A stretch of 64,000 nucleotides of DNA. Origin: Octopus sinensis (Eukaryota). The position numbers were made by a program, and so were the translations under genes. The notes below the pieces were generated by a model, which was given only the letters and a program-made list of their open reading frames with translations, was not told where the DNA came from and ran no database searches. The stretch is from positions 20,832,001 to 20,896,000 of the forward strand of contig NC_042998.1 of assembly GCF_006345805.1 (NCBI RefSeq), written 5' to 3'. Below are positions 5,670 through 33,700 of the stretch, piece by piece. Each line of letters begins with the position of its first letter. Within the stretch, counting starts at the first letter, position 1.

Positions 5670-5729
5670 ATACATACGTACGTACGTACATACATACATA
5701 CATACATACATACATGCATGCATGCATAC

Positions 5730-5760
<31 letters not shown>

Positions 5761-6254
5761 CATGCATACATACATACATACATACATTCATGCATACATA
5801 CATACATGCATGCATGTATGCATACATGCATACATGCATGCATGCATACATACATACATACATACATTCATGCATGCATGCATACATACATACATACATA
5901 CATTCATGCATGCATGCATACATACATACATACATGCATACATACATACATACATGCATGCATACATACATGCATGCATGCATGCATACATACATACATG
6001 CATGCATGCATGCATGTATGCATATATACATATATACATACATGCATACATGCATGAATACATACATACATACATACATACATACATACATGCATGCATG
6101 CATGCATGCATACATACATGCATATATACATATATACATACATACATGCATGCATGCATGCATGCATACATACATGCATACATACATACATACATACATG
6201 CATACATACATGCATACACACATACATACATACATACATACATACATACATACA

Positions 6255-6285
<31 letters not shown>
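5670..6285. repeat. (TACA)n/(TGCA)n compound microsatellite
   Basis: Direct reading. Confidence 0.95.
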
Positions 6286-6287
<2 letters not shown>

Positions 6288-8189: not shown

Positions 8190-8609
8190 TTGCTCTGTGA
8201 AAAAGTTTGCATAGAACGGCGAAATAACCCACTGTAGTTGCAAAACGTAAAACTCTAAGTCATAGAGATCACTACAACACTGGTTAAAAAATATTTTTTA
8301 AAATATATATATAAATATATACATATACACAGTAATTTTCATTTTTGCCGAAACGCACATGGTGCAAAAATAACTGAATCAAGTTATCTCCTGCAAGAAA
8401 GAAAAAAGAAGCATCTCTCCTGAAAAAAATCCCGTAACAAAAAAAAAAATAATCCAGACCACATTGTTGGATTAAGTCAATATCTTATCTATTTCATATT
8501 TTATTTATTATTCTATTTTATCTTTCACTTAGGCCCACATCTTAGTTAAAGTTGCGATCGTCATTTTGTTTGTTACATTTTCAATAACTGTTCTCGATAT
8601 AATAATTTT

Positions 8610-9528
8610 CCAGACACTCTATCTTCTAATTAGCCTTAAGATTAATTAAATAACTTTTAATATTGATACCGTCAAATTAGCCTTAGGATTAAATTAAATA
8701 ACGTTTAATATTGTTTAATATTGTTAATAATTATTGTTAATTAGCCTTAAGATTAAATTAAATAACGTTTAATATTGTTTAATATTGTCAATAATTTTTC
8801 AGATACTCTATCTTCTAATTAGCCTTAAGATTAAATTAAATAACGTTTAATATTAATAACGTCTAATTAGCCTTAGGATTAAATTAAATAACGTTAATAT
8901 TGTTAATAATTATTGTTAATTAGCCTTAGGATTAAATTAAATAACGTTTAATATTGTTTAATATTGTTAATAATTACTGTTAATAGCCTTAAGATTAAAT
9001 TAAATAACGTTAATATTGTTTAATATTGTTAATAATTATTGTTAATTAGCCTTAGGATTAAATTAAATAACGTTTATATTGTTTAATATTGTTAATAATT
9101 ATTGTTAATTAGCCTTAAGATTAAATTAAATAACGTTTAATATTGTTTAATATTGTTAATAATTTTCAGATACTCTATCTTCTAATTAGCCTTAAGATTA
9201 AATTAAATAACGTTTAATATTACCCACACTCTAATATAATATTAACATTGCTAATATATTTTCAGATACTCTATCTCCTGATTAGCCTTAAGATTAAATA
9301 ACGTTTTTATCCACACTCTAACATAATATTAATATTGCTAATATATTTTCAGATACTCTATCTTCTAATTAGCCTTAAGATTAAATTAAATAACGTTTAA
9401 TATTAATAACGTCTAATTAGCCTTGAGATTAAATTAAATAACGGTTAATATTGCTTAATATTGTATATAAAATTTTTCAGATACTCTGTCTTCTAATTAG
9501 CCTTAAGATTAAATTAAATAACGTTTAA
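8610..9528. repeat. AT-rich minisatellite, variant units of about 45-75 bp built on TAATTAGCCTTAAGATTAAATTAAATAACGTTTAATATT
   Basis: More than a dozen recurrences, running into the gap. Confidence 0.9.
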
Positions 9529-9628
9529 NNNNNNNNNNNNNNNNNNNNNNNNNNNNNNNNNNNNNNNNNNNNNNNNNNNNNNNNNNNNNNNNNNNNNNNN
9601 NNNNNNNNNNNNNNNNNNNNNNNNNNNN
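9529..9628. other. Assembly gap (100 N)
   Basis: Run of N. Confidence 1.
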
Positions 9629-12600: not shown

Positions 12601-13345
12601 TCGCGGGCTTTCTGTCACTTCCGCCTTGTTCGTTTTGATGTCTGGATTGCATATGGCGGGTATTTGGGTTTTGGCGCCTTTTCTGTCGTGTTGACTATAT
12701 ACCCTCGAGATTTCGTTATCTCTTGTTTCGGATGTGGCATTTAGCATCCTTGATTGGAGTCGTGTTTGCTCTGCACTCTGACCTGCTTGAATTGTTTTTT
12801 GTAGGTCTAAATTTGGTTCTCTCAATAATCTTTCTCTTAATCTCATGTCTCTGATTCCACATATCAGAATATCTTTGGTGAGACTGTCTGTGAGGTTGCC
12901 GAATTCGCACTGTTGTGCCTTTTGGCGCAACTCTACTACGTACTCATCGAATTTTTGATGTTCCGCTTGTCCACATGTGAAAAATTTGTGTCTTAGGAAA
13001 GTTATGTTTTTCCTGGGTTCACAATATGCATCGAATTTTTCGATTACTGTCTGAAGGTTCATTTCTTCGTCGGGTGAATCGAAATCCAGTGTGGAATGGA
13101 TATCTCGGCCTTTAGAACCGATGCAAGTTAAAAACATTGAAGTTTTTACTTTGTCTGGCTTCATGTCACTTTCTGTTGCTATCAAAAAGAGATTGAATTC
13201 TTTTTTCCACTTTTTCCATGCTGCGGCTAGATTTTCCTGATTAAAGTCTAGGTCTTTTGGATGCGGTAAATTTTCCATTTCGTCTTTGAAGTATGATTTC
13301 AACTTCTTTTTTCCTTTGGTTTCTGTATTTTGGGTTCTTTTAGTA

Positions 13346-14099: not shown

Positions 14100-14246
14100 C
14101 GTATACACAGAAGTATTCGAGTGAAGAGAAGACATTGCAACCTACAGATGCGCCTTCGTTCCCTAGAGGGAAAGGACTAGATTGGGATTAGTCGTTGCCT
14201 ACTAGGGGCTCTTACATACCCGGGCAACGCCGGACTATGCTGCTAG

Positions 14247-14247
<1 letters not shown>
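14100..14247 (+). mobile_element. Helitron 3' end fragment
   Basis: CCCGGGCAACGCCGG hairpin followed by GCTGCTAG|T. Confidence 0.5.
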
Positions 14248-14277
<30 letters not shown>

Positions 14278-14321
14278 GTATACATATATATACATACATA
14301 TATATATATATATATGTATAC

Positions 14322-14356
<35 letters not shown>

Positions 14357-14412
14357 TTACATATATATATATTATATATACATATATATATATATACATA
14401 TATATGTATATA

Positions 14413-14444
<32 letters not shown>

Positions 14445-14488
14445 CATATATATGTATATATATACATATGTATAATATATATATATAC

Positions 14489-14519
<31 letters not shown>

Positions 14520-14692
14520 GATATACATATATATATACATATATATATATATATACACATATATATATATATACATATGTATATATATATATATATAGAC
14601 ATATATATATATAACATATATATGTATATATATATACATATATATATACATATATATACATATATATGTTATATATATACATATATATATAC

Positions 14693-14723
<31 letters not shown>

Positions 14724-14738
14724 CATATATATATATAT

Positions 14739-14792
<54 letters not shown>

Positions 14793-14960
14793 CAATATAT
14801 ATATACATACATATATATGTATATATATATACATATATATATACATATATATATACATATATATGTATATATATACATATATATATACATATATATATAT
14901 ATACATATATACATATATATATATATACATATATGTATATATATATATATGTATATAATA

Positions 14961-14995
<35 letters not shown>

Positions 14996-14997
14996 TA

Positions 14998-15031
<34 letters not shown>

Positions 15032-15177
15032 ATATATATATATATACATTATATATACATATATATATACATATATATATATATATACATATATATAATA
15101 TATATATATACATATCTATATATATATACATATATATATATATACTATATACATATTATATATATATACATATATAC

Positions 15178-15212
<35 letters not shown>

Positions 15213-15272
15213 CATATATACATATATATATATATATACATATATATAATATATATACATATACATATATAC

Positions 15273-15339
<67 letters not shown>

Positions 15340-15402
15340 CTATATATATAATACATATATATATATATATATATATCATATATATATACATATATATATT
15401 AC

Positions 15403-15435
<33 letters not shown>

Positions 15436-15523
15436 CTATATATATACATATATATAATATATATATACATATATATATATATAACATTATATATACATAT
15501 ATATATACATATATATAATATAC

Positions 15524-15571
<48 letters not shown>

Positions 15572-15822
15572 TATATATCTATATATATACATATATATAT
15601 ACATATATAATATATATATATATTATATATATATAATATATATACATATATATACATATATATATATAATATATACATATATAATATATATATATATATT
15701 ATATATCTATATATACATATATATAATATATACATATATATATATATATACATATCTATATCTATATATATATTACATATATATACATATATATATATAT
15801 ATATATTATACTATATATATAT

Positions 15823-15886
<64 letters not shown>

Positions 15887-15902
15887 CATATATACATATA
15901 TA

Positions 15903-15941
<39 letters not shown>
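14248..15941. repeat. About 1.7 kb degenerate (TA)n/(TATACA)n microsatellite
   Basis: Direct reading. Confidence 0.95.
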
Positions 15942-15942
<1 letters not shown>

Positions 15943-17049
15943 TCATAATATTAATACGCTAACTTTTTGTTTTGTATGTACCTGATGTGTGTCTCACACT
16001 TCAGAGAAGTGGCAAAGTGAGAGAGAGGAGGACAAGAGGAAGTAAGAAAGAAAGAGAGAGGAGAGAGAGAGTGAGAGAAAGAAAGAGAGAAAGTGAGAGA
16101 GACAGTTCATAGATACATAGACACAGCAAATATTGGCTGTCAATTTCACTTTTCATTACCACACGAGGATAAAATTAACTCACAAATGGCTGAGTACTCC
16201 ACAGGCATGCATAACGTTAACGTAGTTCTCAGGGAGATTCAGCCTCACACAGAATATGACAAGGCTGGCCCCTTTGAATTACAGCTACAACTCCAGACAT
16301 ATATATGTATAATGTATTTGTGTGTGTGCATAGTTTAGGTTAGTTAAAACAATGTTTGCAATAATAAGTGTCGCGTGATGAAAATAAACGCAATTACCAA
16401 ACTTTCATTCATAAATCCATTTATTATTTCGTTCTTTTGCATTTCAATTTGTACATTAAGGTTCTTCGAATATGTACGATGTATTTTAAAGTTAAATAGT
16501 AATTCCGTTTACATTTGTGTAACTTTCTATATTCTGTAACTGTCACAATATACTTTTCTAGGCCTGAAAATTTTGTGGGGAGGTGGGGCAGTTGATTAGA
16601 TCGACCCCAGTACACAACTGGTACTTAATTTATCGACCTCGAAAGGATGAAAGGCAAAGTCGACCTCGGCAGAATTTGAACTCGGAACATAAAGACAGAC
16701 GGTCATAATATACAAACATTTCTCATGGCACCAGTACACTGTTCGCAGATGCTTACATTTTTTGTTTTCCGTGAATTTTTCATGGGTCCAGCTAGTATGA
16801 AGAGACCGATAGAATAAGTACTGATCTTACAAAGAATAAGTCCTGGGGTCGATTTGCTCGACTAAAGGTGGTGCTTCAGCATGGCCGCAGTCAAATGCCT
16901 GAAACAAGTGAAAGGATAAAAGAGTTGTAGATACGAGGCGAATTTAGAGCGAAAAAAACCCCCCAAAAATTGATTTTAATCGTGGAATGTACGATGAATG
17001 AGGGGAGTAGGTTATTAAATTTTCTTTCATTTCTTTAAACTGCGAATTA

Positions 17050-17495: not shown

Positions 17496-17843
17496 CTGGA
17501 TAAAACGATGAAAAATTACGAATATGGAAAAATAATTTTACTCGAGATATTGCGAAGACACGTTGTAGTCGACAGATAGGGAGAAGATACGAAATTAGTT
17601 GCTGTGACATTTCAAAAAACGGGTTTTGAAAAAAAAAAAAGCATTTTTTTTTTTGTGAATGAGTAATTTGCTATTGTTTTGCATTCAGAAAATGTTAAAA
17701 AAATTCCGAAAAACTAATTTTATTTCTAGTTTGTGATTTCTATTTCGAATAGAGGGAGAATAACGAAGAAAAAAAAACTTTCTCTTGGCCTTTAGAAATT
17801 GATGATACGTTGTCAAATAATGTATTGTAAAGCGAAAGGACGA

Positions 17844-17913
17844 GGGGCGGGGTAAACGCCGGCAGAAGCACCAACGAGCGACGTGCTTGCTCTACTTTAT
17901 TCTCCATATAAAG
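17844..17913 (+). promoter_or_regulatory. Putative AS3MT core promoter: GC box GGGGCGGGG (17844-17852) and TATA-like TATAAAG (17907-17913)
   Basis: Motifs seen about 90-155 nt upstream of ATG 18000 in a locally CpG-rich patch. Function is inferred. Confidence 0.45.
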
Positions 17914-17999
17914 TTGAATTTCATTAATCGCTCCTTTAAGCTTTTCGCCGACACTTGTAGATAATACCAACTGTTGTTTCTCTAGGAATAAATATAAAC

Positions 18000-18172
18000 A
18001 TGCGTGACGCAAGTGAAGGAAAAATCCACGATCAAGTGAAGGAATATTACGGGAAAACCGTTAAAACAACGGATGACCTAAAACTTAGTTCATGCAGTGT
18101 ATCACTAGGCAAAAGGCTTAGCCCACGGGTAAAGAATGTCATTGCTATGGTCCACGAGGATATCCGTAAGAA
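18000..18172 (+). CDS. AS3MT: AS3MT coding exon 1, upstream duplicate copy (MRDASEGKIHDQVKEYYGK...VHEDIRK)
   Basis: Near-identical to 22516-22688, open frame, intact GTAAGT donor at 18173 in the same phase, so it can join exon 2. Confidence 0.8.
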
Positions 18173-18650
18173 GTAAGTAAACAATTATAAGATCGAAAAT
18201 TACAAAGTTTGCCTTTCAGCTACTGAAATCGATAAAACAAATCCTATTTACCGTATTTTAACGTGTTAAAGGAACCCTCTTGTATAAGGAATCCCCTAAT
18301 TTTTCGTGCTTAAAATTTGAAGAAAAAAGTTTTGTAAGGGATTATAATACTATCTATGTTTAAGAAACTCCCATATTTTTTTAACCTAATTTTTGACAAA
18401 AAAGGGTACCTTACGTTAAAATACGGTAAGTAGAGAGATCGATAAAAATAGACAAAGGTGATAGGATGACCGAATCGTTTGAGAATCGAACGAAATGTTC
18501 GTGGTTTTTTTAATTATAGCTGTTAAACGTTTTGCGTTCAAATCTCACCAAGGTTAACTTTGCCTTTCATTCTTTCGAGGTCGATGAAACAAAGTATCTG
18601 TCAAATACTGGAGTCGGTGTAATCGAATCAATAATACGGATTGGTAATCC

Positions 18651-20573
18651 GGTTAATATAGGGCGTAACAAATATCAGAAAATCAAAAAAAAAATGTGTG
18701 TAATAGGTGTAAAACAACTTCCTATGAACGAATATGAAAAAAAAAATTCGCGCACGCGAAAGGGGGGTGGGGGAGAGGCCTCGGAAAATTCACATCGGGA
18801 AGTTCCGAAAGCGTCTGAGGAGCTGACCCGGGCACCAAAACAAAAAAAAAATAGTGTAATATGTGTAAAACAACTTGCTCTAAACGAATATGAAAAAAAA
18901 AATGCGCTCTCGAGAAAGAGGGGTGGGGGAGAGGCCTCGGAATATTTATATCGGGAATTTCCGAAAGCGTCTGAACCGGGCACAAAAACAAAAACAAAAA
19001 CAGCGTAATAGGTGTAAAACAACTTGCTCTAAACGACTATCATGAAAAAAATGCGCGCTCGCGAAAGGGGGGTGGGGGAGAGGCTTCGGAAATTTCACAT
19101 CTTCAGTCCACGGCCTTTAAACTAAGAAAAAATAGTGTAATTGGTGTAAAACTACTTGTTCTAAACGAGTATCAAGAACACACACTCACACATGAATCAT
19201 AAACTCCGTATTTCGCAAAAAAAAAAAATAAGAGAAGAAATTCTGGAAAAAGTGAAGAAATGTTGGATCTCCGCCATGTGAATCAAAATACGTGTCAGAA
19301 ACATCTTGAAATACTACAGAAATTATGTTACGAAAATGATAATGTATACATACCTCTTTGAGTGGTCCATCGATAATGATGATAAAGAAATGAGTTGGAT
19401 TTGAACTCAGAATATTGACTAACACAACTACATACTACAAGACTCAAAATATTCAGCCAAGTCACCACCCTTTAACTAGCAATAATAATAACATCAATAA
19501 CATAACAGCCAAAAGATTTATCTGTTCTGAAAATAACAATCATAGTAAATAAATATGTTCTTTAATATTCACATTCATGTGCACAGTTAAACACACTTAC
19601 ATACAAACAGTCACGCATGCATAATACAGAACGGAACACATAAATGAAGGATGCATTACTTAGTATATATTACATCTAGAGAATTTTGATTAATAAGTCA
19701 AATATGCAAATTATAAAGATAATTAATTGCTTTACTAAACAGTGTTGTAAAGGTGAAAAAATAAATTTGGGAAAAAAACACGCCAAAACTAATTAATAAA
19801 GGATAATTAGGGAAGGATTGACACAAAATAATAATTTTTTCTGTCTCTTTTTTTCTGATAAATGCATCTTAATAAGTGAGAAGAATTGCATATATCTGAA
19901 CTATTTCAAAGAAAAGCATAAATTTAATGTTTAAAATAGCTTTAACCAAGGAATGAGATCCAACATTTCTTCACTTTTTCCAGAATTTCTTCTCTTTAAT
20001 TTTTTTTTGCGAAATACGGAGTTTATGATTCATGTGTGAGTGTGTGTTCTTGATACTCGTTTAGAACAAGTAGTTTTACACCAATTACACTATTTTTTCT
20101 TAGTTTAAAGGCCGTGGACTGAAGATGTGAAATTTCCGAAGCCTCTCCCCCACCCCCCTTTCGCGAGCGCGCATTTTTTTCATGATAGTCGTTTAGAGCA
20201 AGTTGTTTTACACCTATTACGCTGTTTTTGTTTTTGTTTTTGTGCCCGGTTCAGACGCTTTCGGAAATTCCCGATATAAATATTCCGAGGCCTCTCCCCC
20301 ACCCCTCTTTCTCGAGAGCGCATTTTTTTTTCATATTCGTTTAGAGCAAGTTGTTTTACACATATTACACTATTTTTTTTTTGTTTTGGTGCCCGGGTCA
20401 GCTCCTCAGACGCTTTCGGAACTTCCCGATGTGAATTTTCCGAGGCCTCTCCCCCACCCCCCTTTCGCGTGCGCGAATTTTTTTTTTCATATTCGTTCAT
20501 AGGAAGTTGTTTTACACCTATTACACACATTTTTTTTTTGATTTTCTGATATTTGTTACGCCCTATATTAACC
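18651..20573. mobile_element. Fold-back type element 1, about 620 bp terminal inverted repeats (18651-19271 / 19955-20573) with internal about 150 bp subrepeats
   Basis: Left end GGTTAATATAGGGCGTAACAAATATCAG and right end are exact reverse complements; arms align throughout; 683 bp AT-rich spacer with no credible ORF. Confidence 0.85.
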
Positions 20574-20643
20574 AAAACTTTCTCTTGGCCTTTAGAAATT
20601 GATGATACGTTGTCAAATAATGTATTGTAAAGCGAAAGGACGA

Positions 20644-20713
20644 GGGGCGGGGTAAACGCCGGCAGAAGCACCAACGAGCGACGTGCTTGCTCTACTTTAT
20701 TCTCCATATAAAG
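20644..20713 (+). promoter_or_regulatory. Duplicate of the putative core promoter (GC box plus TATA-like), separated from its exon by a 1.7 kb insertion
   Basis: 20574-20733 is a copy of 17774-17933 (offset 2800). Confidence 0.45.
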
Positions 20714-20733
20714 CTGAATTTCATTAATCGCTC

Positions 20734-22222
20734 TGTACTTATCTATTGTCGTGGTCCCGGTTTCGCACACGCGAATTCGCGCGCGCGCGCGCCAGACGTA
20801 GGTACTCGATACTCGAGATCCTACGAGGTGACTTGCGCATGCGCAGTGCAGAATTCGCGCATGCGCGTTAACGCCCCCCCTAAAAAAAAGGTGTTGGATT
20901 TCACTAAAAATATGTGTGTGTGTGTGTGTGTATATATAACATTTTCAATTTTACACAAAAAAATTACATAGTCGCTTTCCTCGCGGATTTACAGATAAAT
21001 GAATTAATTACTATTTTACAGAATAAAATTAATGAATTAATTATATAAATTAAATAATTCTTGAAAATTAATTAATATCAATAATATTTTTTGAACAAAG
21101 TAAATAATTTATAAAACTTGGTTAATAATTTTTTTTACACAAACGCGAACGTATATAATTTGTGAAACTTTTTTTTTTTTTACAGACGTATATAATTTGG
21201 TAAACTTAATGAATTAATTTCTTATCATCATCATCATCGTTTAACGTCCGTTCTCCATGCCAGCATGGGTTGGATGGTTCGACCGGGGATCTGGGAAGCC
21301 AGAAGGCTGCACCAGACTCCAGTCTTATCTGGCAATGTTTCTACAGCTGGATGCCCTTCCTAACGCCAACCACTCCGAGAGTGTAGTGGGTGCTTTTTAC
21401 ATGCCACCCGCACAGGTGCCAGGCGAGGCTGGCAACGGCCACGGTCGGATTGGTGCCAGTCGAGGCGGCTCTGGCATCGGCCACGATTCGGATAGTGCTT
21501 TTTACGTACCACCAGTCCAGGGGTCCTGGCATTTGCCGGGTGTCACACTTGCCCCAACATGTCTTCGCAAGCAAAGGGGGTTGGCATGGGTGCCTGTCGT
21601 GGGATGAGGTTCGATATCAACTTCGCTTGCCTCAACAGGTCTTTGTGTATAAATGTATAAATTTTTCGCACTAAATTCTTTCCGTAGAATTTATCAAAAA
21701 ACGCGCAAAATTATTCCGTAGAATTTATCAAATTAAAAAACGCAAAATTAATATATTTTTTGAAATTGCAAATTATTTAGAATATAAAACAAATGAAGTT
21801 AAATTTTAAAAATAAATGTCATATACTTATACTCTGTAAGGTGCTGTGTTCACACTTCAATTTACTATTTTCTAGAAATGTTGCTTTTCTAATTGAAACA
21901 ATTTTTCTCAATCTCCATTTAAAAGTCCATCATGTCTCTTGAGACATATCAAAATGAACAACTTTGAATTACGTCTGTAAAAAAAAAAAAAAGTTTCACA
22001 AATTATATACGTTCGCGTTTGTGTAAAAAAAATTATTAACCAAGTTTTATAAATTATTTACTTTGTTCAAAAAATATTATTAATATTAATTAATTTTCAA
22101 GAATTATTTAATTTATATAATTAATTCATTAATTTTATTCTGTAAAATAGTAATTAATTCATTTATCTGTAAATCCGCGAGGAAAGCGACTATGTAATTT
22201 TTTTGTGTAAAATTGAAAATGT

Positions 22223-22261
<39 letters not shown>

Positions 22262-22441
22262 TTTTAGTGAAATCCAACACCTTTTTTTTTAGGGGGAGGC
22301 GTTAACGCGCATGCGCGAATTCTGCACTGCGCATGCGCAAGTCACCTCGTAGGATCTCGAGTATTGAGTACCTACGTCTGGCGCGCGCGCGCGCGCGAAT
22401 TCGCGTGTGCGAAACCGGGACCACGACAATAGACAAGTACC
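20734..22441. mobile_element. Fold-back/MITE-like DNA transposon 2, about 460-470 bp TIRs, 8 bp target site duplication AATCGCTC
   Basis: Arms 20734-21190 and 21970-22441 are reverse complements. AATCGCTC lies at 20726-20733 and 22442-22449, and the empty site is visible in the other copy at 17926-17933. Confidence 0.9.
21225..21648 (-). mobile_element. RTE 3' UTR copy nested in fold-back element 2
   Basis: Reverse complement matches 62818-62900 and 63600-63839. Confidence 0.85.
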
Positions 22442-22515
22442 AATCGCTCCTTTAAGCTTTTCGCCGACACTTGTTGATAATACCAACTGTTATTTCTCTA
22501 CGAATAAATATAAAC

Positions 22516-22688
22516 ATGTGTGACTCAAGTGAAGGAAAAATCCACGATCAAGTGAAGGAATATTACGGGAAAACCGTTAAAACAACGGATGACCTAAAGC
22601 TTAGTTCATGCAGTGTATCACTAGGCAAAAGGCTTAGCCCACGGGTAAAGAATGTCATTGCTATGGTCCACGAGGATATCCGTAAGAA
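22516..22688 (+). CDS. AS3MT: AS3MT coding exon 1, downstream copy (MCDSSEGKIHDQVKEYYGKTVKTTDDLKLSSC...VHEDIRK)
   Basis: ATG at 22516, YYG and Cys32 motif, donor GTAAGT at 22689 (phase 2). Confidence 0.88.
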
Positions 22689-24724
22689 GTAAGTAAACAA
22701 TTATAAGATCGAAAATTACAAAGTTTGCCTTTCAGCTACTGAAATCGATAAAACAAATCCTATTTACCGTATTTTAACGTGTTAAAGGAACCCTCTTGTA
22801 TAAGGAATCCCCTAATTTTTCGTGCTTAAAATTTGAAGAAAAAAGTTTTGTAAGGGATTATAATACTATCTATGTTTAAGAAACTCCCATATTTTTTTAA
22901 CCTAATTTTTGACAAAAAAGGGTACCTTACGTTAAAATACGGTGAGTAGAGAGATCGATAAAAATAGACAAAGGTGATAGGATGACCGAATCGTTTGAGA
23001 ATCGAACGAAATGTTCGTGGTTTTTTTAATTATAGCTGTTAAACATTTTGCGTTCAAATCTCACCAAGGTTAACTTTGCCTTTCATTCTTTCGAGGTCGA
23101 TGAAACAAAGTATCTGTCAAATACTGGAGTCGGTGTAATCGAATCAATAATACGGATTGGTAATCCTTAACCAAAGCGGTGTCAGTTTAAATGAAACTAA
23201 TATTTCTTCTATAGTAGTTGTTTTCATTCTGGGTCCACATGAAATTTTTGGGGTCCACGCAACTAAATAGTAAATAGTAAACTGGGGATCTTCAATAGTA
23301 TTTTAAGAGCCCCTGAAAAAATTTTGTATGTATTGTAAGAAGGAGCTAGGTTTCTTTCTCTAACATATGTAGTTCAACCTACACAAGTTAATGTATGAAA
23401 AACAAAAAAAGAATTTAGTAAGTTACTATAAAACTAGTTTTTAAACATCAAATGGCTATGGGGTCCACCAGAATAAAATAGTAATCAAAGGGTTTCATAG
23501 ATAAAGAAAAATGGTCAGGAACCCCTGTTCTATTGGGGGATAGACATATGTAGAGGTATGGCATAGACATACGTCCACATGTGTGCCCCAACTGTTTTCT
23601 CTATTCACTGGTGTAGCCTCAGATTTACAGTGATATACTTATTTCAAAACTCCACTTTAGCATTATTACAAATTGGCTCCCAACCAGAATATTCTGAAAC
23701 ACCCCCAAGAACCGAAGTCTGGCGACGGGCCTGGTTGCAGAGTAAATTGAAAAATCTCATAAATTTTGAAATGCGTAATAGGACCGCCGTAAGCCTAGTT
23801 TGGCATAATTTCATTTATTATTTCGTTTTGGATTTGGTTTGCAAGATTCTTTATTATGGTCTCTAGATTTCCAGCTGGTTGTTCAGCAACTTCCGAAAGA
23901 AGTTATATTTAATTACTTTTGTTTTCGTGTCCAGTTTGAAGGCGACATTTGCTCTGAACTCGGTGAGATAGGTGAAAAGTCGAACTTCTAGGGAATGTCG
24001 CATTCAAGGGGACATGAAAACTGAAGTAAATAAATTAAAATTATTTATGGAAATAACCGAACAACCAGGAAATCTCCTGACCATAAACGAAACTATTTCG
24101 TCCCCACTTTTTTTTTTTTTTTTAATTTTATGAAATGAAAATATTTCAATTCATGATTTTTAAATGTCTGCTTCTCCCACTTCTCATACCTTTATGGCAG
24201 CTACGTTACTAAAAAGATTTTTCCCTTCACGTTGGTGTAAGTTTATCATATTCTGAAACGTATTTTAAACGTCGTGTCCTTCTTCACCCTCACTTATCAT
24301 GCCTATAATAATAAACACTACTAGAATCTACAGGTACAAGGCCTGAAATTGGGGTGGAGGGTCTTGTCGATTATGTCGACTCCAGTACGCTAATGGTACT
24401 TAATTACTTAATTTTTTTTTGTCCATCTCGAAAGAATGAAAGGTTAAGTCGACCTCGGTGGAATTTGAACTCAGAACGTAAAAACGGATGAAATGCCGTT
24501 AAGTATTTGGGCCGCGTTTCTGCCAGCTTGCCGCCTTACACCTTAGGAAGAAAAAAAACTGAAATGATATCCAATTCAGTACCTAAAGGGTTGCAAAAAG
24601 AACTTAACCTTTTCGCCCTTCTGCACGTGTACACGCACAAAAACACATACAAACGTGTAAGTGCCCACTGGTGGGAGGGAACAAACACACCCACACAAAT
24701 ACATACACACACACACACACACAC

Positions 24725-24759: not shown

Positions 24760-27700
24760 TTCTTTACTACCCACAAGGTGCTAAACACAGAGAGGACAAA
24801 CAACGACAGACAAACGGATTAAGTCGATTACATCGACCCCAGTGCGTAACTGGTACTTAATTTATCGACCCCGAAAGGATGAAAGGTAAAGTCGACCTCG
24901 GCGGAATTTGAACTCAGAACGCAGCAGCGGACGAAATACCGCTAAGCATTTCGCACGGCGTACTAACGATTCTACCAGCTCGCCGCCTTCACACACATAT
25001 ATATACACACGATGGGCTTCTTTCAGTTTCCGTCTACCAAATCCACTCACAAGGCTTTGGTTGGCCTGGGGCTATAGTAGAAGACATTTGCCCTAGGTGT
25101 CATACAGTGGAACTGAACCCAAAACCTCATAGTTGTGAAGCAAATTTTGTAACAGCATAGCCATGCCCGTCTCAACGGACGTCGGAGATAGATAGCACCA
25201 AGTTGGAATTTCTCCGTTTTGACGGGGATTTTTCCGAAATTTCTTTCATGGAGTCTTTGGAAATGATCTGAAGCATCTTTTTACAGAAAATAAATTTTTC
25301 GGAAAATATATTTTTTAACCCCTTCCCCCCACAACTTCCCCTCTCTTGACCAATTTTGGTCGAATTTGTGGGCACTATGCTCTTAAAAAGACCTTTCAGT
25401 AAAAAAAAAAGTAGATATTTTTAGATGAATAGGTGTGTGATTTTAAGGGAGATTTGGTTGTTGTTTCCATGACCGGTAAGGTTGGTTTCATAAAAATCAT
25501 AAATTTTCAAAAATATTCTTTTTAGTAGCATAAATGAGTTTAACTAAAAAGACTACAGCAACTCAGGGAAACTAAGCCAGAACAACCTGCCATCCTCTAC
25601 ACACCATCATAAACTGCGAGCAGGGTACAAATTGTTGTCCTTAAATGCTCGCAGTTTATGCAACAAAATACATTTGTTCAACGCCTACGTCAGAAGTGTT
25701 GACCCTGACTTCATCACTGTCACGGAAACATGGGCGCATTCCTTACTCTGTGATGGGGTTTTCAACATTACGGGGTACAACCTCTTCCGTAAGGACCGCA
25801 CTAACTGCCGTGATGGTCTACGTTCGTTCAAATTTTTTGGTAATTCCTTGTGCCGATTTGAACGAATCACAAGAAGAAGTTTTTTTCTATGATGTGCGTA
25901 TGACCATGTCAACACTCCTGCTTGGCGTTGTTTATCGTCCCCCAAGTTACCATCGGGACACACAGCTTTGCAATGTCCTCCGAGCTGCTGCCAGGAAAAC
26001 AGCCACTTATGTGTTTATTGCAGGCGATTTCAATCATCCTGAGATCGATTGGGAGACCTTCCATTGGCCACAGAGTGCAAACGATTTTGTTGAGCTTGTG
26101 CTGGACTCAAACTGGTCACAAGTAGTCACCTCTCCAACAAGAGGCGACAACACCTTGGACCTGCTCTTCACCACAACTCCTGAAGCGGTTATCAATTGCA
26201 CTACGGAGGAACCTCTAAGTGACTCTGATCATGCTATGATCATCGCCAATCTGGCTCTTGCGGGCAACAAAAACCTGAACCATCTCCAATCTGCTTCCTT
26301 CGATTGGAAGAGAGCAGATTGGAACCTGTACCACACTGAACTACAGCACCCAAACTGGCGTGAATTCTACAACTCTGAAGATGTGAATACTATACTCCAG
26401 AGTATCCTGGACTCAATATGGGCAGCATGTGCAGCATCAGTGCCACGTAAACAAAAAAAGAAGAACCGCCCCAAAAGGGCAATTTGGGAAACTTCAGCGG
26501 TCCGACTTGCCAGGAGGGAACGTCGGACTGCTGAACAGGAATACAGGTTGCATAAATCAGACACCAACAGGAAGAAGCGGAATAAATCCTCCAACCATCT
26601 CAAGCAAGTAACAAAAAAAGCAGTGCTTGAATTTGAACAGTGCATAGCAGCCAATCCTGACAGTAAGGTTTTCTGGAAATATGTGCACTCAAAGCAGAGA
26701 CCTCACTCTCCAGTGGACCCTCTTCGCAACCCTCACACAAACCAGATCACTGACGACCCCAAGGAATGCGCAGAACTCATTGCCGAGTGCTATGCAAACA
26801 TATTCACTGTTGAAAGTCAAGATGTACCATCTTCACCATCACTAACAGCAAACTCCATAACAACTATGGAATTTACACCTGCAATGCTGCGACGTCACCT
26901 TCAAAGTAAGCGCAACTATGCCTCCCCTGGTCTCGATGGAGTTACATACCTGCTTCTCAAACGTGGCAGGCACTTCCTTTTACACCAGCTTTCTATTTTC
27001 TTCCAGTACTGTCTCAACAATGGTGCTACTCCGGAGCAGTGGAAAACTGCCAGTGTCATTCCTCTGTTCAAAAAGGGCGACCGCACATCACCTGTCAACT
27101 ATCGCCCAGTCAGTCTCACTAGCTGTATTGCAAAACTGATGGAATCGTGTGTCAGAGAAACACTCTGGAACTTCTGGAGCTCTCACAGTCTCATCCGACC
27201 CTCACAATATGGATTTGTCCCTAACTCCAGCTGCAGTGACCAGCTTGTCGAGTTCCTTGAGGACATTACTCAGATTACTGACAGTGGCTCATGGGTGGAT
27301 GTTGTCTACCTTGACTTTGCTAAGGCTTTCAACTCTGTGCCACACAAAAGGCTTATGGTGAAACTCTCTGCAATGGGTGTGGGGGATGACCTTTTTAACT
27401 GGTTGAAATCCTTCATCCTCAGCCGAAAGGAGGTTGTCACAGTTCTAGGACAGCACTCTACACCATATGAGATGTCATCGGGTGTACCACAGGGATCTGT
27501 CCTTGGTCCCCTCTTGTTTGTGGCATACATTAACGACATAGATGCCAATTTAAAGAATGCCACAGTATTGAAATATGCAGACGACATCAAGCTGTACCTT
27601 GAAATCAAGAGGACAGATCCTGATGTCTACAACTCTTTCCTGCAATCAGACCTAGACACAATGCAGCAATGGATCACAGACTGGCAACTGAAACTGGCTG

Positions 27701-30700
27701 TGGACAAGTGTACCACCATGCATTTTGGGAGAAAAAACCCTGCGTTCACATACTCCCTCCACAACACTGATATCAAGAAATCCTCTTGCGAGCGTGACCT
27801 AGGCATCACTGTCAGCAGTGATTTGCGTTGGACAAAGCATATCTCTAAGATTGTCAGGAAGGCCGAGGGTGTCTTGGCATCACTCAGCAGGTCTTTTGTT
27901 AGCCACTCTCCAGCCATCTATTTAAAACTGTATACAGCTATGGTACGACCACACTTGGAATTTGCATCATCAGTTTGGAATCCCTATCTTGCACAGAACA
28001 TTGACCTCCTGGAATCTGTCCAGAGACGTGCAACCAAACGCATACCCTCCATCAGACACCTACCATATTCTGAGCGCCTTGTTTCCCTGGGCATGGATTC
28101 ACTGAAGCTCCGGCGTCTGGCGACAGACTTGGTAAACACCCACAAAGTTATCAACCACCTCACCAACAACAACACTGAACACCTTTTTGATCTCCATGTG
28201 TCTAACACACATGGACATGCCTACAAAGTCAGAAAACAATACAGCTCTCATGACTTTCGGAAACATTTTTTCACGCTCAGAGTTGCTGAAGCATGGAATA
28301 AACTGCCTGCATCAGTTGTTGACTGCCATGACACTGCATCTTTTAAGGCCCTCATGCTTTCCGAAATCCGCCGAAACTACACCTGATTATATATACACTT
28401 TAGATGAGTTGTAGTGCACCTGAGCACTGTACACAATTATTATTATTATTATTATTATTATGTTATTAATAGGAAGACAATATTGAAAAACACCAACACT
28501 TGTTAGAGTGAGAAAGAAACGAGGAAGGTGGTCATGAGATATGCTAGAAACAACAGCCAAATCTTCCTTTAATACCACATATTTTCGTCTGAAAATATAT
28601 ATTTTTTTTTCCTGGAAAGGCTTCTATAGTTAAGTGCATAGTGCCCACAGAATCGACGAAAACCGGTCCAGAGAGGGGAAGTTGTGGTGGTGGTTATGGT
28701 GGTTAAAAAAACAGATTTTTCAAAAAAAAATCTTGGTTAATTTTTCTGTCAAAAAGATGCTCCAGATCATTTCCAAGGACACCATAAAAAAACCCCCAAA
28801 AAACTGAACAATCACCATCAAAAGAGAGAAATTCCAACTTCTTGGTGCTATCTATCTCTGACGTCCACACCTGTCTCTTACGATTTATTGTATAAATGAA
28901 AATCATCATCATCATTTAATGTCCATTTCCCATACTGCATAAGTTGGACAGTTTGACCGGAGCTGGCAAGCTGGAGAGAGCTGTACCAAGTTCCAGCTTG
29001 ATTTAGCTTGGTTTAGCTATGGATGCCCTTCCTAATGCCCACCACTTTACAGAGTGTACTGGGTGGCACCAGCATGGGTGCATTGTATGTGGACCAGTAC
29101 AGGTGTAAGTTTTGAACTTGAGTTTTCCTTTGATTTATTGTCATCACTTCTGGTCATTTCTTTGTATTTTACTTGTACTTTTGTCACCTAAAAGAGGACA
29201 CAGTGCTCGATTTAATATACAACTGGAAAAAGGGGAAACAAAAATTGATTCAGGTGCAGGAGTGGCTGTGTGGCAAGTAGCTTGCTTACGAACCACATGG
29301 TTCCGGGTTCGGTCCCACTGTGTGGTACCTTGGTCAAGTGTCTTCTACCATAGCCTTGGGCCGGCCAAAACCTTGTGAGTGGATTTGGTAGACGGAAACT
29401 AAAAGAAGCCTGTCGTATATATGTATATATATATATATGTATGTGTGTGTCTGTGTTTGTCCCCCCAACATTGCTTGACAACTGATGCTGGTGTGTTTAC
29501 ATCCCTGTAACTTAGCGGTTCGGCAAAAGAGTCTGATAGAATAAGTATTAAGCTTACAAAGAATAAGTCCTAGAGTTGATTTCTTCGACTAAAGGCAGTG
29601 CTCCAGCATGGCCGCAGTCAAATGACTGAAACAAGTAAAAGAATTAAGAGCCAAACTAATTCCAATCCTTAACAGCATTATAAGCCCTGGGTAAATTAAT
29701 ACACTGGACCCATTTATTGACAGCAAACAACAACATGTGTAGCTCAGAATTGGGACCCCTAAACCCATGAGGTCCCCAGTCAACTGTATTGTGTGCTCAT
29801 GCCTTGATATGGCCCTGGACTGAGTACAATATGTGTCCACAGAGACTCTGCTTATAAATCTTTATATATAAAAGTGAAGTTGTGTGTCTGTCTCCTACGA
29901 TTTAGATTCCTAACTACTCCCACATTTTGCGGTGCAGTGTAACCAAAAGTGGGTATCTTATAGTCGTGATTCATATCGAGCCCTTCTGGGTATTAGCATG
30001 AGTCTACGATTTAAAAAAAAAATTTAACATCATTTTTTCCCATTTTTAATGCATTTTTTAGCTATTATATAAGGGAAGTAACTCTCTAAAAATGTATTAT
30101 TAAATCTCAGAATGTAAAAAGCTACAGTAACACCCCCCCCCCTTTGTGGTTAGCCATATTGAGATGGCTATTATACTTTACATCTCTAAAAATGCTTATA
30201 TAGTTATTTCCCTTACAAACCCGAGCAACGCCGGGCGATACTGCTAGTCCATTATAAATTTCTTGTGCTTGAGCAGGTTTCACAGTGTGTCCTTTCAATG
30301 CTATGCTTGACTGCAGAATATATATATTCTTTTATTCTTTTAGTTGTTTCAGTCATTTGACTGCGGCCATGCTGGAGCACCGCCTTTAGTCAAACAAATC
30401 GACCCCCCCCCCACCATGACTTATTCTTTGTAAGCCTAGTACTCATTCTATTGGCCCCTTTTGTTGAACCGCCAGGTTATGGTGACGTAAACACACCATC
30501 AGTTGTCAAGCGATATGGGGGGGGATAAACAAACACACGAATACATACACATGCACACACACATATATATACACACGATGGGCTTCATTCAGTTTCAGTC
30601 TACCAAATCCACTCACAAGGTTTTTGGTTGGCCTGAGGCTATAGTAGAAGACATTTGCCCAAGGTGTCATACAGTAGAACTGAACCCAGAACCATGTCAT

Positions 30701-33700
30701 TGGGAAGCAAGCTTCTTACCACACAGCCATGCCTGCTCCTATGACTGAAACAAGTAAATGGAATTTTATGCATTTCAGCTTATAGGCGCAGGAGTGGCTG
30801 TGTGGAAAGTAGCTTGTCTACCAACCACATGGTTCCGGGTTCAGTCCCACTGCGTGGCACTTTGGGTAAGTGTCTTCTACTACAGCCTCAGGCTGACCAA
30901 AGCCTTGTGAGTGGATTTGGTAGACGGAAACTGAAAGAAGTTCGTCGTATATATGTATATTTATATATATATATATATATATATATTTGTGTGTCTATGT
31001 TTGTCCCCCTCGCATTGCTTGACAACCGATGCTGGTGTGTTTATGTCCCCGTCACTTAGCGGTTCGGCAAAAGAGACTGATAGAATAAGTACTGGGCTTA
31101 CAAAAGAATAAGTCCCGGGGTCGAGTTGCTCGATTAAAGGCAGTGCTCCAGCATGGCCGCAGTCAAATGACTGAAACAAGTAAAAGAGTAAAGAGTATAG
31201 TTCGCAACAACAACATCAGCATTCTTCATAGAACACAGATGCTCCTCAATCAATACTGTGTAGACATATTTGCTAAGGTAGATATTCTTATTTTGTGATT
31301 TCTTCCACAAAATTTCCTTAGCCAGGTCACTAACTATTTACTCCACACATTTCTTCCCTTTCCCGATTGACACTGAATGCCACCGATGGATAAGACACCA
31401 TCAAAAGGAATTGTGTACAGAAGAATATGGCAATCTTCATGACGAAGTAAGACGAAATGATCAGGTTGCTGCTTTGAATATTGGACGTTCTGTCATTCTC
31501 CTATCATCATACACTGAAGGCCCCTAGTACATGCATGAAAAAATGCAGGATGCTCTCACTTATGTCCACCACAGTGGCTGTCCAGATTTTTTCCTCACCT
31601 TCTCTTGTAATCCCAAATGGGTTGACAGCCAGTCTCACTTTACGGCCCAAATACTCCAGATAGGCATGATATCACATCTAGAGTGATATCACATCAAAAG
31701 GCGGCGAGCTGGCAGAACCGTTAGCATGCCGGGTGAAATGCGTAGCCATATTTCATCTGCTGTTACGTTCTGAGTTCAAACTCCGCCGAGGTCGACTTTG
31801 CCTTTCATCCTTTCGGGGTCATTAAATTAAGTACCAGTTATACACTGGGGTCAATGTAATCGACTTAATTCGTTTGTCTGTCCTTGTTTGTCCCCTCTGT
31901 GTGTAGCCCCTTGTGGGTAATAAAGAAACAGATATTACATCTAGAGTGTTTCATCTGAAGTTAATGAAAATGATGGACGTTATAAAACACGGATATGTTT
32001 TTGGACCATTAAGTTGCTTCATGTACACTGTAGAATGGCAGAAAAGAGGACTCCCTCATGCCCATATCCTCCTCTGGCTTCAAAACAAACTCATGTCAAC
32101 AGATATTGACTCCGTTATTAGTGCTGAGCATAGCAATTTAAAAATATCACGATTTTTTTTTTAAAGTTGCCAGATCTTTCATCTACAAAGTTTGTAAGGT
32201 GCTGGAGACTGAAGATGGAAATGTATCACAGCATCAAAGCATAAAAAGCATTTTGAATGCTCTGAAATCATCAGACCACCTGAATTTATCCAGCAAGTTC
32301 AACAGGTCATTGATTACAATCCCAGAAACCATTAAGGTCAATTGCAAAAGATCTCCATGTGTCAGAAGGAACGATCAGAAATGTTGTCCATGAAGACATC
32401 AGATATAAGTCTTATATGATGAGGAAAGGTCAATTTGGCAGAAAAAAGCAAAAGAAAATCACTACATCAGATCTAAAAGGCTCTTAAACAAACTGAAAAA
32501 TCCAGCAATATATTTTTTTGGTTTTTCTCAAACAAGAAAATCTTCGACCAAGATCAAAAAGTTAACAGAAGAAATGACAGATGGTTATGTGCAGACCCTT
32601 CTGAATTTCCAAGTGTTATGCATACAAAATTTCCTGCCACTGTCATAGTTTTAGGGGTTGTCAGCAATAAAGGACATGTGATGCCTCCTTACTTCTTTTC
32701 AGAAGGCCTTTGAGTTAACTCTGATGCCTACATTGAGGTCCTGGAAATAATTGTTAAGTCCTGGATAGACAGTGTATGCAATGGAAGGCCATGTGTGTTT
32801 TAGTAAAACTCTGCACTATCACACATGGCTCCAGTAGCACAGGAATGGATGGCTGAAAATTTTTATGATCACATAACCTCTAACGTTTGGCCTTCTAATT
32901 CCCCAGATCTCAATCCATTCGACTATTACATGTGGAGCATTGTTGAAAGAGAGATCAATGAACACGCCCATAACACCAAAGATTCTTTGAAAGCTGCCAT
33001 AGTCGGAGTAATGTCCAAAATGAATCAGGACCACTTGATTTGAGCATGTAAGCGATTTAGATCTCATATAGAAGCAGTTGTTGAAGCTGAACGTGGCTTT
33101 ATTGAATAACATTATAGAAAAGAAGGTTTATTGTTATTGTCATAGTATTTTTTGATAAAATTATCTGTCATTGTATATCTGGTTTTTTTTTATAAACATA
33201 AATCTCTGTCATTGTATATCTGTTTTTTTCTTATAAACATAAATCTCTGTCATTGTATATCTGTTTTTTTTTATAAACATAAATCTTCCCTGTATATTTA
33301 TATAGATAGATACATAGATGCACACAATCACACCATATATGTATTTTATTCAGATATTATGGATGTGGACTTGTGATTCCTGAAAGCCTGGAAGGTATGA
33401 AGATCCTTGATTTGGGAAGTGGAAGTGGACAAGATTGTTTTGCATTATCAAAACTGGTTGGAGCTGATGGTTATATAGTTGGTGTTGATATGACACAAGA
33501 ACAGGTAAGACAATTCTAGATTATTCTTTTATTTTTCTAGGACTTGGCAATTTTAGTTGTACTCTTGCACAAATTTTGTAAAATGCTGCACTATTTTTGA
33601 TGTGCTCTGAACATGTCCTAATGCTATTAATAACTTGTAGGGACATGATATTTCATTATGCAACTATAATATAATTGGTTGTCTGGAAAGTTTGTGCCGA

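What the first reader, a model, noticed from the sequence alone, without database searches (positions are those of the whole stretch)
17774..23166. AS3MT promoter and first exon duplicated as an 877 bp direct repeat flanking a fold-back element
Structure: [17774-18650 promoter+exon1+intron start]-[element 1, 18651-20573]-[same block at 20574-20733 and 22442-23166, split by element 2]. The duplicated block abuts both TIR ends exactly, like a giant target-site duplication. This points to transposon-end-mediated duplication (aberrant or alternative transposition, or repair) of the regulatory front end of an arsenic-metabolism gene. The copies differ at about 9 positions by eye (about 1%), so the event is recent. 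It gives the gene two possible starts.
Basis: partly seen in the sequence, partly recalled or inferred. Interest (0 to 1): 0.78.

Follow-up and report, generated by a model that had tools for sequence, protein, structure and literature searches.

The report
Tandem AS3MT first-exon duplication beside transposon
The start of an arsenic-methyltransferase gene (likely core promoter, first exon, start of intron 1) is present twice in tandem with a fold-back transposon at the joint, but the junctions look like a short-homology repair duplication (or possibly two alleles joined), not a transposase-made "giant target-site duplication".

Summary
Block A (17774-18650) equals block B (20574-20733 + 22450-23166): 877 bp each, 9 substitutions, no indels. 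Fold-back element E1 (18651-20573) lies between them. Fold-back element E2 (20734-22441) splits block B and has a clean 8-bp target-site duplication. The block holds a genuine AS3MT exon 1 (ATG at 18000 and 22516). Exons 2-5 lie downstream.

The 9 bp that close and follow E1 (TTAACCAAA) recur directly after block B. Removing a 1917-bp insert leaves two directly abutting 883-bp units. They join through a 3-bp microhomology (AAA) inside an A-run. E1 sits at the last of 13 TTAA sites of unit 1, 2 bp from its end, with an odd extra GG. Neither reading of the E1 ends gives the target-site-duplication pattern expected of alternative transposition.

Best reading: a break or stalled fork at the E1 palindrome was repaired by microhomology, probably on the E1-free, E2-bearing homologue. 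The 1% divergence would then be allelic and would not date the event.

An assembly artefact cannot be excluded without reads, but no gap separates the copies. No other copy of E1, E2 or the locus was found in any collection. Interest is modest.

The parts
17774..18650 (+). Block A (unit 1 without its last 6 bp): 226 bp upstream sequence, AS3MT exon 1, and 478 bp of intron 1 ending in an old SINE fragment
   Evidence: Searches give the repeat. One search shows that 18519-18632 is about 77% identical to SINE copies elsewhere in the window.
17844..17913 (+). Putative core promoter: GGGGCGGGG at 17844 and TATAAA at 17907. This is motif-based inference only.
   Evidence: No transcript data are available.
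18000..18172 (+). Exon 1A coding part (MRDASEGK...IRKK, phase 2) with a GTAAGT donor at 18173
18651..20573 (.). E1, a fold-back element of 1923 bp. Arms are 18651-19271 and 19955-20573, and the loop is 19272-19954 (28% GC). Each arm holds 155-bp subrepeats. The DNA actually inserted relative to unit 2 is 18651-20567, which reads GG + TTAA + core.
   Evidence: No other copy exists in the window.
20568..20576 (+). TTAACCAAA: host sequence at the end of unit 1, ending in the AAA microhomology of the duplication joint
   Evidence: The same sequence occurs at 23167-23175.
20574..20733 (+). Block B, first part (upstream sequence up to the E2 insertion site). It differs from block A by a T>C change in the base after TATAAA.
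20734..22441 (.). E2, a fold-back element of 1708 bp, with arms of about 20734-21190 and 21970-22441. A SINE copy is nested in its loop (21224-21648). The 8-bp target-site duplication AATCGCTC lies at 20726-20733 and 22442-22449.
22442..23166 (+). Block B, second part (its first 8 bp are the E2 target-site duplication): 5'UTR, exon 1B and the start of intron 1
22516..22688 (+). Exon 1B coding part (MCDSSEGK...IRKK). It carries R2C, A4S and one synonymous change. The donor is intact.
23167..23175 (+). TTAACCAAA after block B. This is the empty E1 site (TAATCC|TTAACC) and the end of unit 2.
33352..33507 (+). AS3MT exon 2 (YYGCG...LDLGSGSG...VDMTQEQ), with acceptor ttattcAG|A. Further exons lie at 35622-35762, 42040-42108 and about 47808-47864.

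Best explanation
A real 883-bp tandem duplication of the AS3MT 5' end (about 226 bp upstream, exon 1 and 0.48 kb of intron 1) was made by microhomology-mediated repair, not by transposase joining.

**Proposed sequence of events (inferred)**
- E1, a 1.9-kb near-perfect palindrome, sat at a TTAA in intron 1 on one chromosome.
- A break or collapsed fork at or next to E1 left an end reading ...E1-TTAACCAAA.
- This end was joined or primed through the AAA microhomology in the A9 run 226 bp upstream of the ATG.
- The partner was most likely the homologue, which lacked E1 and carried E2.
- Copying or joining then continued through b'-E2-c'-TTAACCAAAG.

**What this accounts for.** The two units are two former alleles in tandem. 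That explains in a single event the 1% divergence, E1 only in unit 1, E2 only in unit 2, and the missing GG in unit 2.

**Shown.** The tandem 883-bp units, the AAA joint, the absence of any longer homology at the breakpoints, and the empty E1 and E2 sites in the other unit.

**Inferred.** E1 as the trigger, and the homologue as the partner.

**Likely consequence.** Transcription from the intact upstream copy A would splice exon 1A to exon 2. Copy B would then be intronic, because E2 splits its TATA-to-start interval. Intron 1 would carry two long hairpins.
For: - **Tandem units.** With 18651-20567 removed, the units abut directly. TTAACCAAA closes both of them.
- **Joint.** The three-way junction view shows unit end ...TTAACCAAA|GCGG, unit start ...GAAAAAAAAA|CTTTC and joint ...TTAACCAAAA|CTTTC. 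That is a 3-bp microhomology.
- **No repeat at the breakpoints.** No direct repeat occurs there, so unequal crossing-over between repeats is not indicated.
- **E1 position.** E1 occupies the last of 13 TTAA sites of the unit, 2 bp from its end. This is expected if E1 provoked the break.
- **E1 left junction.** The only indel between the units (GG) lies exactly at the E1 left junction. It is palindromic to the flank (CC|GG), as in a repair joint.
- **E1 arms.** They show 0 substitutions in 575 bp, against 9 in 877 bp between the blocks (Poisson P = 0.003). The event or E1 is therefore younger than the block divergence.
- **E2 empty site.** E2 has a clean 8-bp target-site duplication, and block A is its empty site.
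- **No assembly gap.** No gap lies between the copies. The only N run is 9529-9628.
Against: - No reads, second assembly, population sample or sister species could be reached. Neither the reality of the joint nor the parental alleles are shown.
- The same sequence would result from an older duplication followed by a chance E1 insertion near the joint. For a TTAA-specific element, the chance of using this site is 1 in 13 within unit 1, or 1 in 26 over both units.
- The true ends of E1 are undefined, because no other copy is available.
- A role for the E1 transposase in making the initiating break is not excluded.
- The identity of the E1 arms could reflect consensus polishing.
Confidence: 0.45

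Rival explanations
1. Assembly artefact: two haplotypes of a heterozygous individual were placed in tandem (a false heterotype duplication). Allele 1 would be a-b-c-E1-d and allele 2 would be a-b'(E2)-c'-d.
For: - The copies differ by about 1% and by two allele-like large indels, E1 in one and E2 in the other. This is what allelic variation in an outbred invertebrate would look like.
- The window is a scaffolded assembly with a 100-N gap.
- False exon gains of this kind are documented (PMC9516828).
Against: - The stated hallmarks of false duplications include gaps between the two copies (PMC9516828). No gap lies here; the nearest N run is 8 kb away.
- The joint shares only 3 bp, so no overlap-based or k-mer-based assembler should create it without reads that contain it.
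- 140 bp of identical sequence (17774-17913) is duplicated, although a graph assembler would collapse it.
- No part of the outer flanks a or d is duplicated beyond 9 bp.
Confidence: 0.15
2. Older tandem duplication, with E1 incidental. A microhomology-mediated 883-bp duplication arose first, and the copies then diverged by 1%. E2 later inserted into copy B. E1 inserted by chance at the TTAA 2 bp from the end of copy A.
For: - Block B shows an intact empty E1 site, and block A an intact empty E2 site.
- The E1 arms are younger than the block divergence.
- TTAA occurs on both sides of the E1 core.
Against: - E1 would have to hit the one TTAA nearest the joint: 1 of 13 in the unit, 1 of 26 in both units.
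- The extra GG is not explained by a clean TTAA integration.
- This scenario needs four separate events.
Confidence: 0.15
3. One reading: alternative transposition, of the P-element hybrid-element-insertion type or the Ac sister-chromatid / reversed-ends type. The two ends of E1 on sister chromatids would insert upstream, duplicating the flank. TTAACC after block B would then be an excision footprint.
For: - The order flank-element-flank, with the palindrome ends touching both blocks, is the order such events produce.
- Tandem duplications whose endpoints coincide with transposon termini are documented for Ac (PMC3744419).
- A 6-bp remnant of one terminus at the old donor site is conceivable for transposases that cut inside the inverted repeat (my own knowledge of P-element footprints, not tested here).
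Against: - No target-site-duplication logic fits.
  - In the GGTTAA...TTAACC reading, E1 has no target-site duplication. The old flanks are GGTAATCC and AAAGCGGT, and no doubled duplication appears at 23167.
  - In the TTAA reading, the right junction keeps 5 bp of old flank, and the new target has no TTAA.
- The joint has the microhomology typical of end joining or template switching.
- The maize products carry an element at the start of each repeat, whereas only one E1 is present here.
- No transposase gene for E1 lies in the window.
Confidence: 0.12

Closest known systems
Microhomology-mediated tandem duplication (template switching at stalled forks / break-induced replication, or microhomology end joining)
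   Same: - Two head-to-tail units.
- A 3-bp microhomology at the joint.
- No long repeat at the breakpoints.
- A secondary-structure-forming sequence (a long palindrome) next to the breakpoint.
   Different: The two units differ by 1% and by two transposon insertions. The partner was therefore probably the homologue, or else the event is old. The trigger is inferred, not shown.
Transposon-induced tandem direct duplications by alternative transposition (maize Ac reversed-ends transposition, PMC3744419; Drosophila P-element hybrid element insertion)
   Same: A class II element lies at the joint of a tandem duplication of flanking host DNA. The duplication starts within a few bp of an element end.
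   Different: - The defining target-site-duplication signature is absent.
- 5-9 bp of old flank separate the element core from the joint.
- There is a single element rather than one per repeat.
- The joint carries microhomology.
Foldback-type transposons (Drosophila FB, Galileo; sea-urchin TU elements)
   Same: - E1 and E2 consist mostly of long inverted arms.
- The E1 arms are built of tandem 155-bp subrepeats.
- Neither element has coding capacity.
- E2 has a clean target-site duplication.
- Such elements are known to promote rearrangements.
   Different: - There is no sequence relation to any described family.
- Copy number in the genome is unknown.
- The E2 target-site duplication is 8 bp. 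From memory, FB gives 9 bp and Galileo 7 bp.
- E1 has only an ambiguous TTAA (+GG) flank.
False heterotype duplication / false exon gain in assemblies (PMC9516828)
   Same: One exon is duplicated next to itself, with allele-like divergence and allele-specific indels.
   Different: No gap lies between the copies. The joint falls inside unique sequence with only 3 bp of overlap. Depth and k-mer tests were not possible.

Membership tests
Alternative-transposition duplication (hybrid element insertion / sister-chromatid or reversed-ends transposition) | Duplication endpoints coincide exactly with the transposon termini | tested here: inconclusive
   The palindrome ends (18651 and 20573) touch both blocks. 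However, the terminal TTAACC plus AAA recurs after block B. The true breakpoint is therefore 0-9 bp from the element end, depending on where E1 really ends.
Alternative-transposition duplication (hybrid element insertion / sister-chromatid or reversed-ends transposition) | Target-site-duplication signature: the old duplication on one side of the element, a new target on the other side, and a doubled duplication or footprint at the vacated donor site | tested here: not met
   - In the GG...CC reading, no target-site duplication is found. The flanks are GGTAATCC and AAAGCGGT.
- In the TTAA reading, the new target GAAAAAAAAA|CTTTC lacks TTAA, and 5 bp of old flank persist.
Alternative-transposition duplication (hybrid element insertion / sister-chromatid or reversed-ends transposition) | A reciprocal deletion product and an active transposase source | not testable with these tools
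   No population data are available. No DNA-transposase ORF for E1 lies in the window.
Microhomology-mediated tandem duplication | Direct head-to-tail units with 1-5 bp of microhomology at the joint and no long homology at the breakpoints | tested here: met
   The units are 883 bp and the joint microhomology is AAA. No repeats occur at the breakpoints.
Foldback-type DNA transposon (E1, E2) | Long terminal inverted repeats that make up most of the element; arms built of tandem subrepeats | tested here: met
   The E1 arms are 621 and 619 bp out of 1923 bp, with 155-bp subrepeats at 2.8 copies per arm. The E2 arms are about 460 bp out of 1708 bp, without long subrepeats.
Foldback-type DNA transposon (E1, E2) | A target-site duplication and an identifiable empty site | tested here: met
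   - E2 meets this: 8-bp AATCGCTC, with block A as the empty site.
- E1 meets it only in part: an empty site exists in block B, but the flank is TTAA with an extra GG.
Foldback-type DNA transposon (E1, E2) | Multiple dispersed copies in the genome | not testable with these tools
   No other copy lies in the 64-kb window. The public collections gave nothing.
False heterotype duplication (assembly artefact) | A gap between the duplicated pair, or copies at contig ends | tested here: not met
   The only N run is 9529-9628. The criteria come from PMC9516828.
False heterotype duplication (assembly artefact) | Half read depth and 1-copy k-mers over both copies | not testable with these tools
   No reads are available.
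Arsenite methyltransferase (AS3MT/ArsM) for the gene | N-terminal YYGK region with a conserved cysteine, the YYGCG motif and the SAM-binding motif LDLGSGSG | tested here: met
   - The exon 1+2 peptide gives E = 3.5e-32 against proteins named arsenite methyltransferase, with Pfam domain PF13847.
- The conserved motifs align with homologues.
- Exons 3-5 were found by tblastn.

The most novel reading that the evidence does not exclude
A single aberrant repair event started at the end of a fold-back transposon and fused two homologous alleles head to tail. The result would be a natural AS3MT allele with two promoter/first-exon modules. These encode different N-termini (MRDAS... and MCDSS...). One module keeps an intact core promoter, and the other has been rewired by a second fold-back element at its transcription start. 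Both could be used as alternative, differently regulated starts of an arsenic-detoxification gene.
Probability: 0.12. Interest if true: 0.55.

Novelty: new member of a known kind. Interest (0 to 1): 0.3.

Why it matters
If the duplication is real, it is a clear natural example in an invertebrate of a palindromic transposon nucleating a small tandem duplication of a gene's regulatory front end. Each unit preserves the empty site of the insertion carried by the other unit. The order and nature of events could therefore be worked out from population data. It also bears on annotation of the gene, which has two candidate first exons differing at residues 2 and 4, and an intron 1 that would carry long hairpins. 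It does not open a new mechanism. It should not be counted as a gene-structure gain until reads confirm the joint.

Tried and rejected
1. **Looking for the same or a related locus elsewhere. All attempts failed.**
   - The exon-1 peptide search found no candidate.
   - Ten exact look-ups of window ORFs, including junction-spanning ones, were not in the collection.
   - A homology search with the 196-aa ORF spanning E1, block B and E2 gave no hit.
   - Two metagenome scans, with the E1 terminus and an exon-1 26-mer, gave 0 hits.
   - An exact look-up of the intronic LINE ORF was not on record.
   - The E1 termini and target-site duplication could therefore not be defined from other copies, and the organism was not identified.
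2. **Other E1 or E2 copies or fragments in the window.** None were found.
3. **TTAACCAAA as the end of another repeat family.** The four other occurrences lie inside an unrelated repeat with a different context. Rejected.
4. **Unequal crossing-over between repeats.** No direct repeats occur at the breakpoints, and the SINE fragments near them are in inverted orientation. Rejected.
5. **Kolobok or piggyBac membership for E1.** Kolobok makes TTAA duplications with RR..YY termini (PMC9587614). The E1 core starts with TA when TTAA is taken as the duplication, and it lacks a TTAA outside GG...CC. From memory, piggyBac ends are CCC...GGG. Neither fits, so E1 is left unassigned.
6. **Block-E1-block as a composite element with long terminal direct repeats (KolobokP-like).** Rejected, because the block carries a host exon.
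7. **Rfam scan of 16-25 kb.** The only hit was a sub-threshold mir-297 match on an (AC)n run.

Full report
**1. Is the observation there?**

Yes. The repeat finder reports 17774-17933 = 20574-20733 (99%) and 17926-18225 = 22442-22741 (98%). Megablast extends the second pair to 725 bp at 98.9%. After removing element 2 and one copy of its 8-bp duplication, the two blocks are 877 bp each. Apart from interspersed transposons, this is the only long direct repeat above 97% identity in the 64-kb window.

**2. Anatomy of the gene**

The block contains a genuine first coding exon of an arsenite methyltransferase.
- The exon 1 + exon 2 peptide hits proteins named arsenite methyltransferase at E = 3.5e-32, with 93% query coverage and Pfam domain PF13847.
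- The YYGK motif, the exon-1 cysteine, YYGCG and LDLGSGSG align with homologues.
- tblastn places exon 1 at both copies. It places exon 2 at 33352-33507, exon 3 at 35622-35762, exon 4 at 42040-42108 and exon 5 near 47808.
- Reading the sequence, the ATG is at 18000 (copy B 22516). The exon ends at 18172 (copy B 22688) with a GTAAGT donor. The exon-2 acceptor is ttattcAG|A, which gives ...IRKK-YYGCG.
- Both copies keep the ATG, the frame and the donor. Copy B has R2C, A4S and one synonymous change.
- The 'promoter' is inference only. It rests on a GGGGCGGGG at 17844 and a TATAAA at 17907, 93 bp before the ATG.

**3. Anatomy of the two elements**

- E1 (18651-20573) is a fold-back element.
  - Its arms are 621 and 619 bp. 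The outer 575 bp have no substitution and one A10/A9 indel.
  - Each arm carries 2.8 copies of a 155-bp subrepeat. The loop is 683 bp at 28% GC.
- E2 (20734-22441) is a second, unrelated fold-back element.
  - Its arms are about 96% alike.
  - It is flanked by a perfect 8-bp duplication, AATCGCTC, and block A shows the uninterrupted target.
  - It is therefore an ordinary insertion. It sits about 20 bp downstream of the TATA-like box of copy B, between that box and the 5'UTR.
  - A SINE copy is nested in its loop.
- Neither element has another copy or fragment in the window.

**4. The junctions decide the mechanism**

| Junction | Sequence |
|---|---|
| Upstream flank / block A | GAAGAAAAA\|AAAACTTTC |
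| Block A / E1 | GGTAATCC\|GGTTAATATAGGGCG |
| E1 / block B | CCCTATATTAACC\|AAAACTTTC |
| Block B / downstream | GGTAATCC\|TTAACCAAAGCGG |

- The 9 bp TTAACCAAA that close E1 and open block B recur immediately after block B.
- Relative to unit 2, the inserted DNA is uniquely 18651-20567, which reads GG + TTAA + core.
- Without that insert, the locus is two directly abutting 883-bp units. The joint lies in AAA, which is shared by the unit end (TTAACCAAA|GCGG) and the A9 run at the unit start.
- No longer homology exists at the breakpoints.
- This is the signature of microhomology-mediated joining or template switching. It is not the signature of transposase strand transfer.

**5. Testing alternative transposition in both readings of the E1 ends**

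- Reading (a): E1 is TATAGGG...CCCTATA with a TTAA duplication.
  - The right junction keeps 5 bp of the old flank (CCAAA).
  - The supposed new target has no TTAA.
- Reading (b): E1 is GGTTAA...TTAACC.
  - There is no target-site duplication. The flanks are GGTAATCC and AAAGCGGT.
  - No doubled duplication appears at the vacated site.
  - The TTAACC after block B must be chance (empirical frequency 3e-4 per position) or a 6-bp footprint.
- The published criteria for transposition-generated tandem duplications are endpoints at the termini, a matching 8-bp duplication pattern, and an element at the start of each repeat (PMC3744419). They are not met here.
- Kolobok-type TTAA elements have RR..YY termini (PMC9587614). 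Neither reading satisfies this together with a TTAA flank.

**6. Why E1 is probably still involved**

- E1 occupies the last of the 13 TTAA sites of the unit, 2 bp from its end. For a TTAA-specific element that inserted after the duplication, this is a 1-in-13 to 1-in-26 coincidence.
- The only indel between the units, GG, lies exactly at the E1 left junction.
  - It is the reverse complement of the adjacent host CC, as a 2-nt palindromic addition at a hairpin-capped end would be.
  - It is equally the reverse complement of the CC beyond the right-hand TTAA.
  - This junction therefore looks like a repair joint. This is inference.
- Long perfect palindromes are established fork barriers and break sites (general knowledge).

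**7. Timing**

- The outer E1 arms have 0 substitutions in 575 bp, against 9 in 877 bp between the blocks (P = 0.003 under equal rates).
- Either E1 is younger than the divergence of the blocks, or its arms are being homogenised in vivo or by polishing.
- E1 occurs only in unit 1, and E2 and the lack of GG only in unit 2.
- The most economical real-world history is therefore one event that joined an E1-bearing chromosome to its E1-free, E2-bearing homologue.
- The 1% would then be standing allelic divergence and says nothing about the age of the event.

**8. Artefact**

The same sequence is what a tandem stitch of two haplotypes would give.

Points against an artefact:
- No gap lies between the copies. 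The only N run is 9529-9628, and gaps between copies are a listed hallmark of false duplications (PMC9516828).
- The joint offers only 3 bp of overlap.
- 140 identical bp are duplicated rather than collapsed.
- No outer flank is duplicated.

It cannot be excluded without reads. I give it about 0.15.

**9. Function (inferred)**

- Copy A is continuous with the native upstream DNA and has an intact TATA-to-ATG interval. Copy B keeps only 160 bp of upstream DNA, separated from its 5'UTR by the 1.7-kb E2.
- Five of the nine differences cluster in 51 bp (17959-18009; permutation p = 0.004). They include AG>AC at a good candidate 3' splice site (tgttgtttctctAG|G at 17984-17985), plus R2C and A4S.
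- If an upstream non-coding exon exists, only copy A could be spliced in.
- The most likely outcome is that exon 1A is used and copy B is an intronic pseudo-exon. Primary transcripts would then carry two long hairpins.

**10. What failed**

All attempts to find this locus, this genome, or relatives of E1 and E2 in the collections failed.

**11. Verdict**

This is a transposon-adjacent, microhomology-type partial gene duplication, which is a known kind of event, and it is not validated by reads. Interest is 0.3.

Noticed in passing
window 17959-18009 (and 22475-22525): Five of the nine differences between the two blocks fall within 51 bp around the start codon (permutation p = 0.004). They include AG>AC at a candidate 3' splice site 15 nt before the ATG, plus R2C and A4S. 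This hints at an upstream non-coding exon, or at relaxed constraint on one copy.
   Followed up: partly
window 18651-18652: An extra GG lies at the E1 left junction and is absent from the empty site in unit 2. It is palindromic to the adjacent CC, like a hairpin-derived addition.
   Followed up: partly
window 14200-16000: About 1.8 kb at 13% GC is made of TA-rich 8-12-bp microsatellite-like repeats, with a central palindrome (arms 14477-14705 and 14706-14934). It was assembled without a gap, which suggests a long-read assembly.
   Followed up: no
window 5500-6350: About 0.8 kb of 8/12-bp periodic CATA/TACA-type repeats, which produce long spurious ORFs on both strands.
   Followed up: no
window 9529-9628: The only assembly gap in the window (100 N). 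It lies just downstream of a tandem-repeat region (8589-9443) and next to a retroelement.
   Followed up: no
window 10119-13302 (- strand): A degraded LTR-retrotransposon pol/gag with broken frames. It has reverse transcriptase and integrase zinc-binding domains (Pfam).
   Followed up: partly
window 25645-28386 (+ strand): An intact 913-aa LINE ORF (endonuclease plus reverse transcriptase) lies in AS3MT intron 1, in the gene's orientation. A 324-bp copy of its 3' end (97.5% identical) sits at 47375-47698, about 110 bp upstream of exon 5.
   Followed up: partly
window 33701-34244 and 53185-53728: A 544-bp inverted pair, 93% alike, contains ORFs with a mariner-like C-terminal motif (my reading; no Pfam hit). 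The pair brackets AS3MT exons 3-5 and is a potential substrate for inversion.
   Followed up: no
window 21224-21648: A SINE-like repeat is nested in the loop of E2. It is 85-96% identical to copies at 34314-34546, 63428-63836 and elsewhere.
   Followed up: partly
window 59885-63800: A second LINE (reverse transcriptase ORF at 60466-62196) is followed by tandem repeats of about 190 bp derived from the same SINE-like sequence (62916-63681).
   Followed up: no
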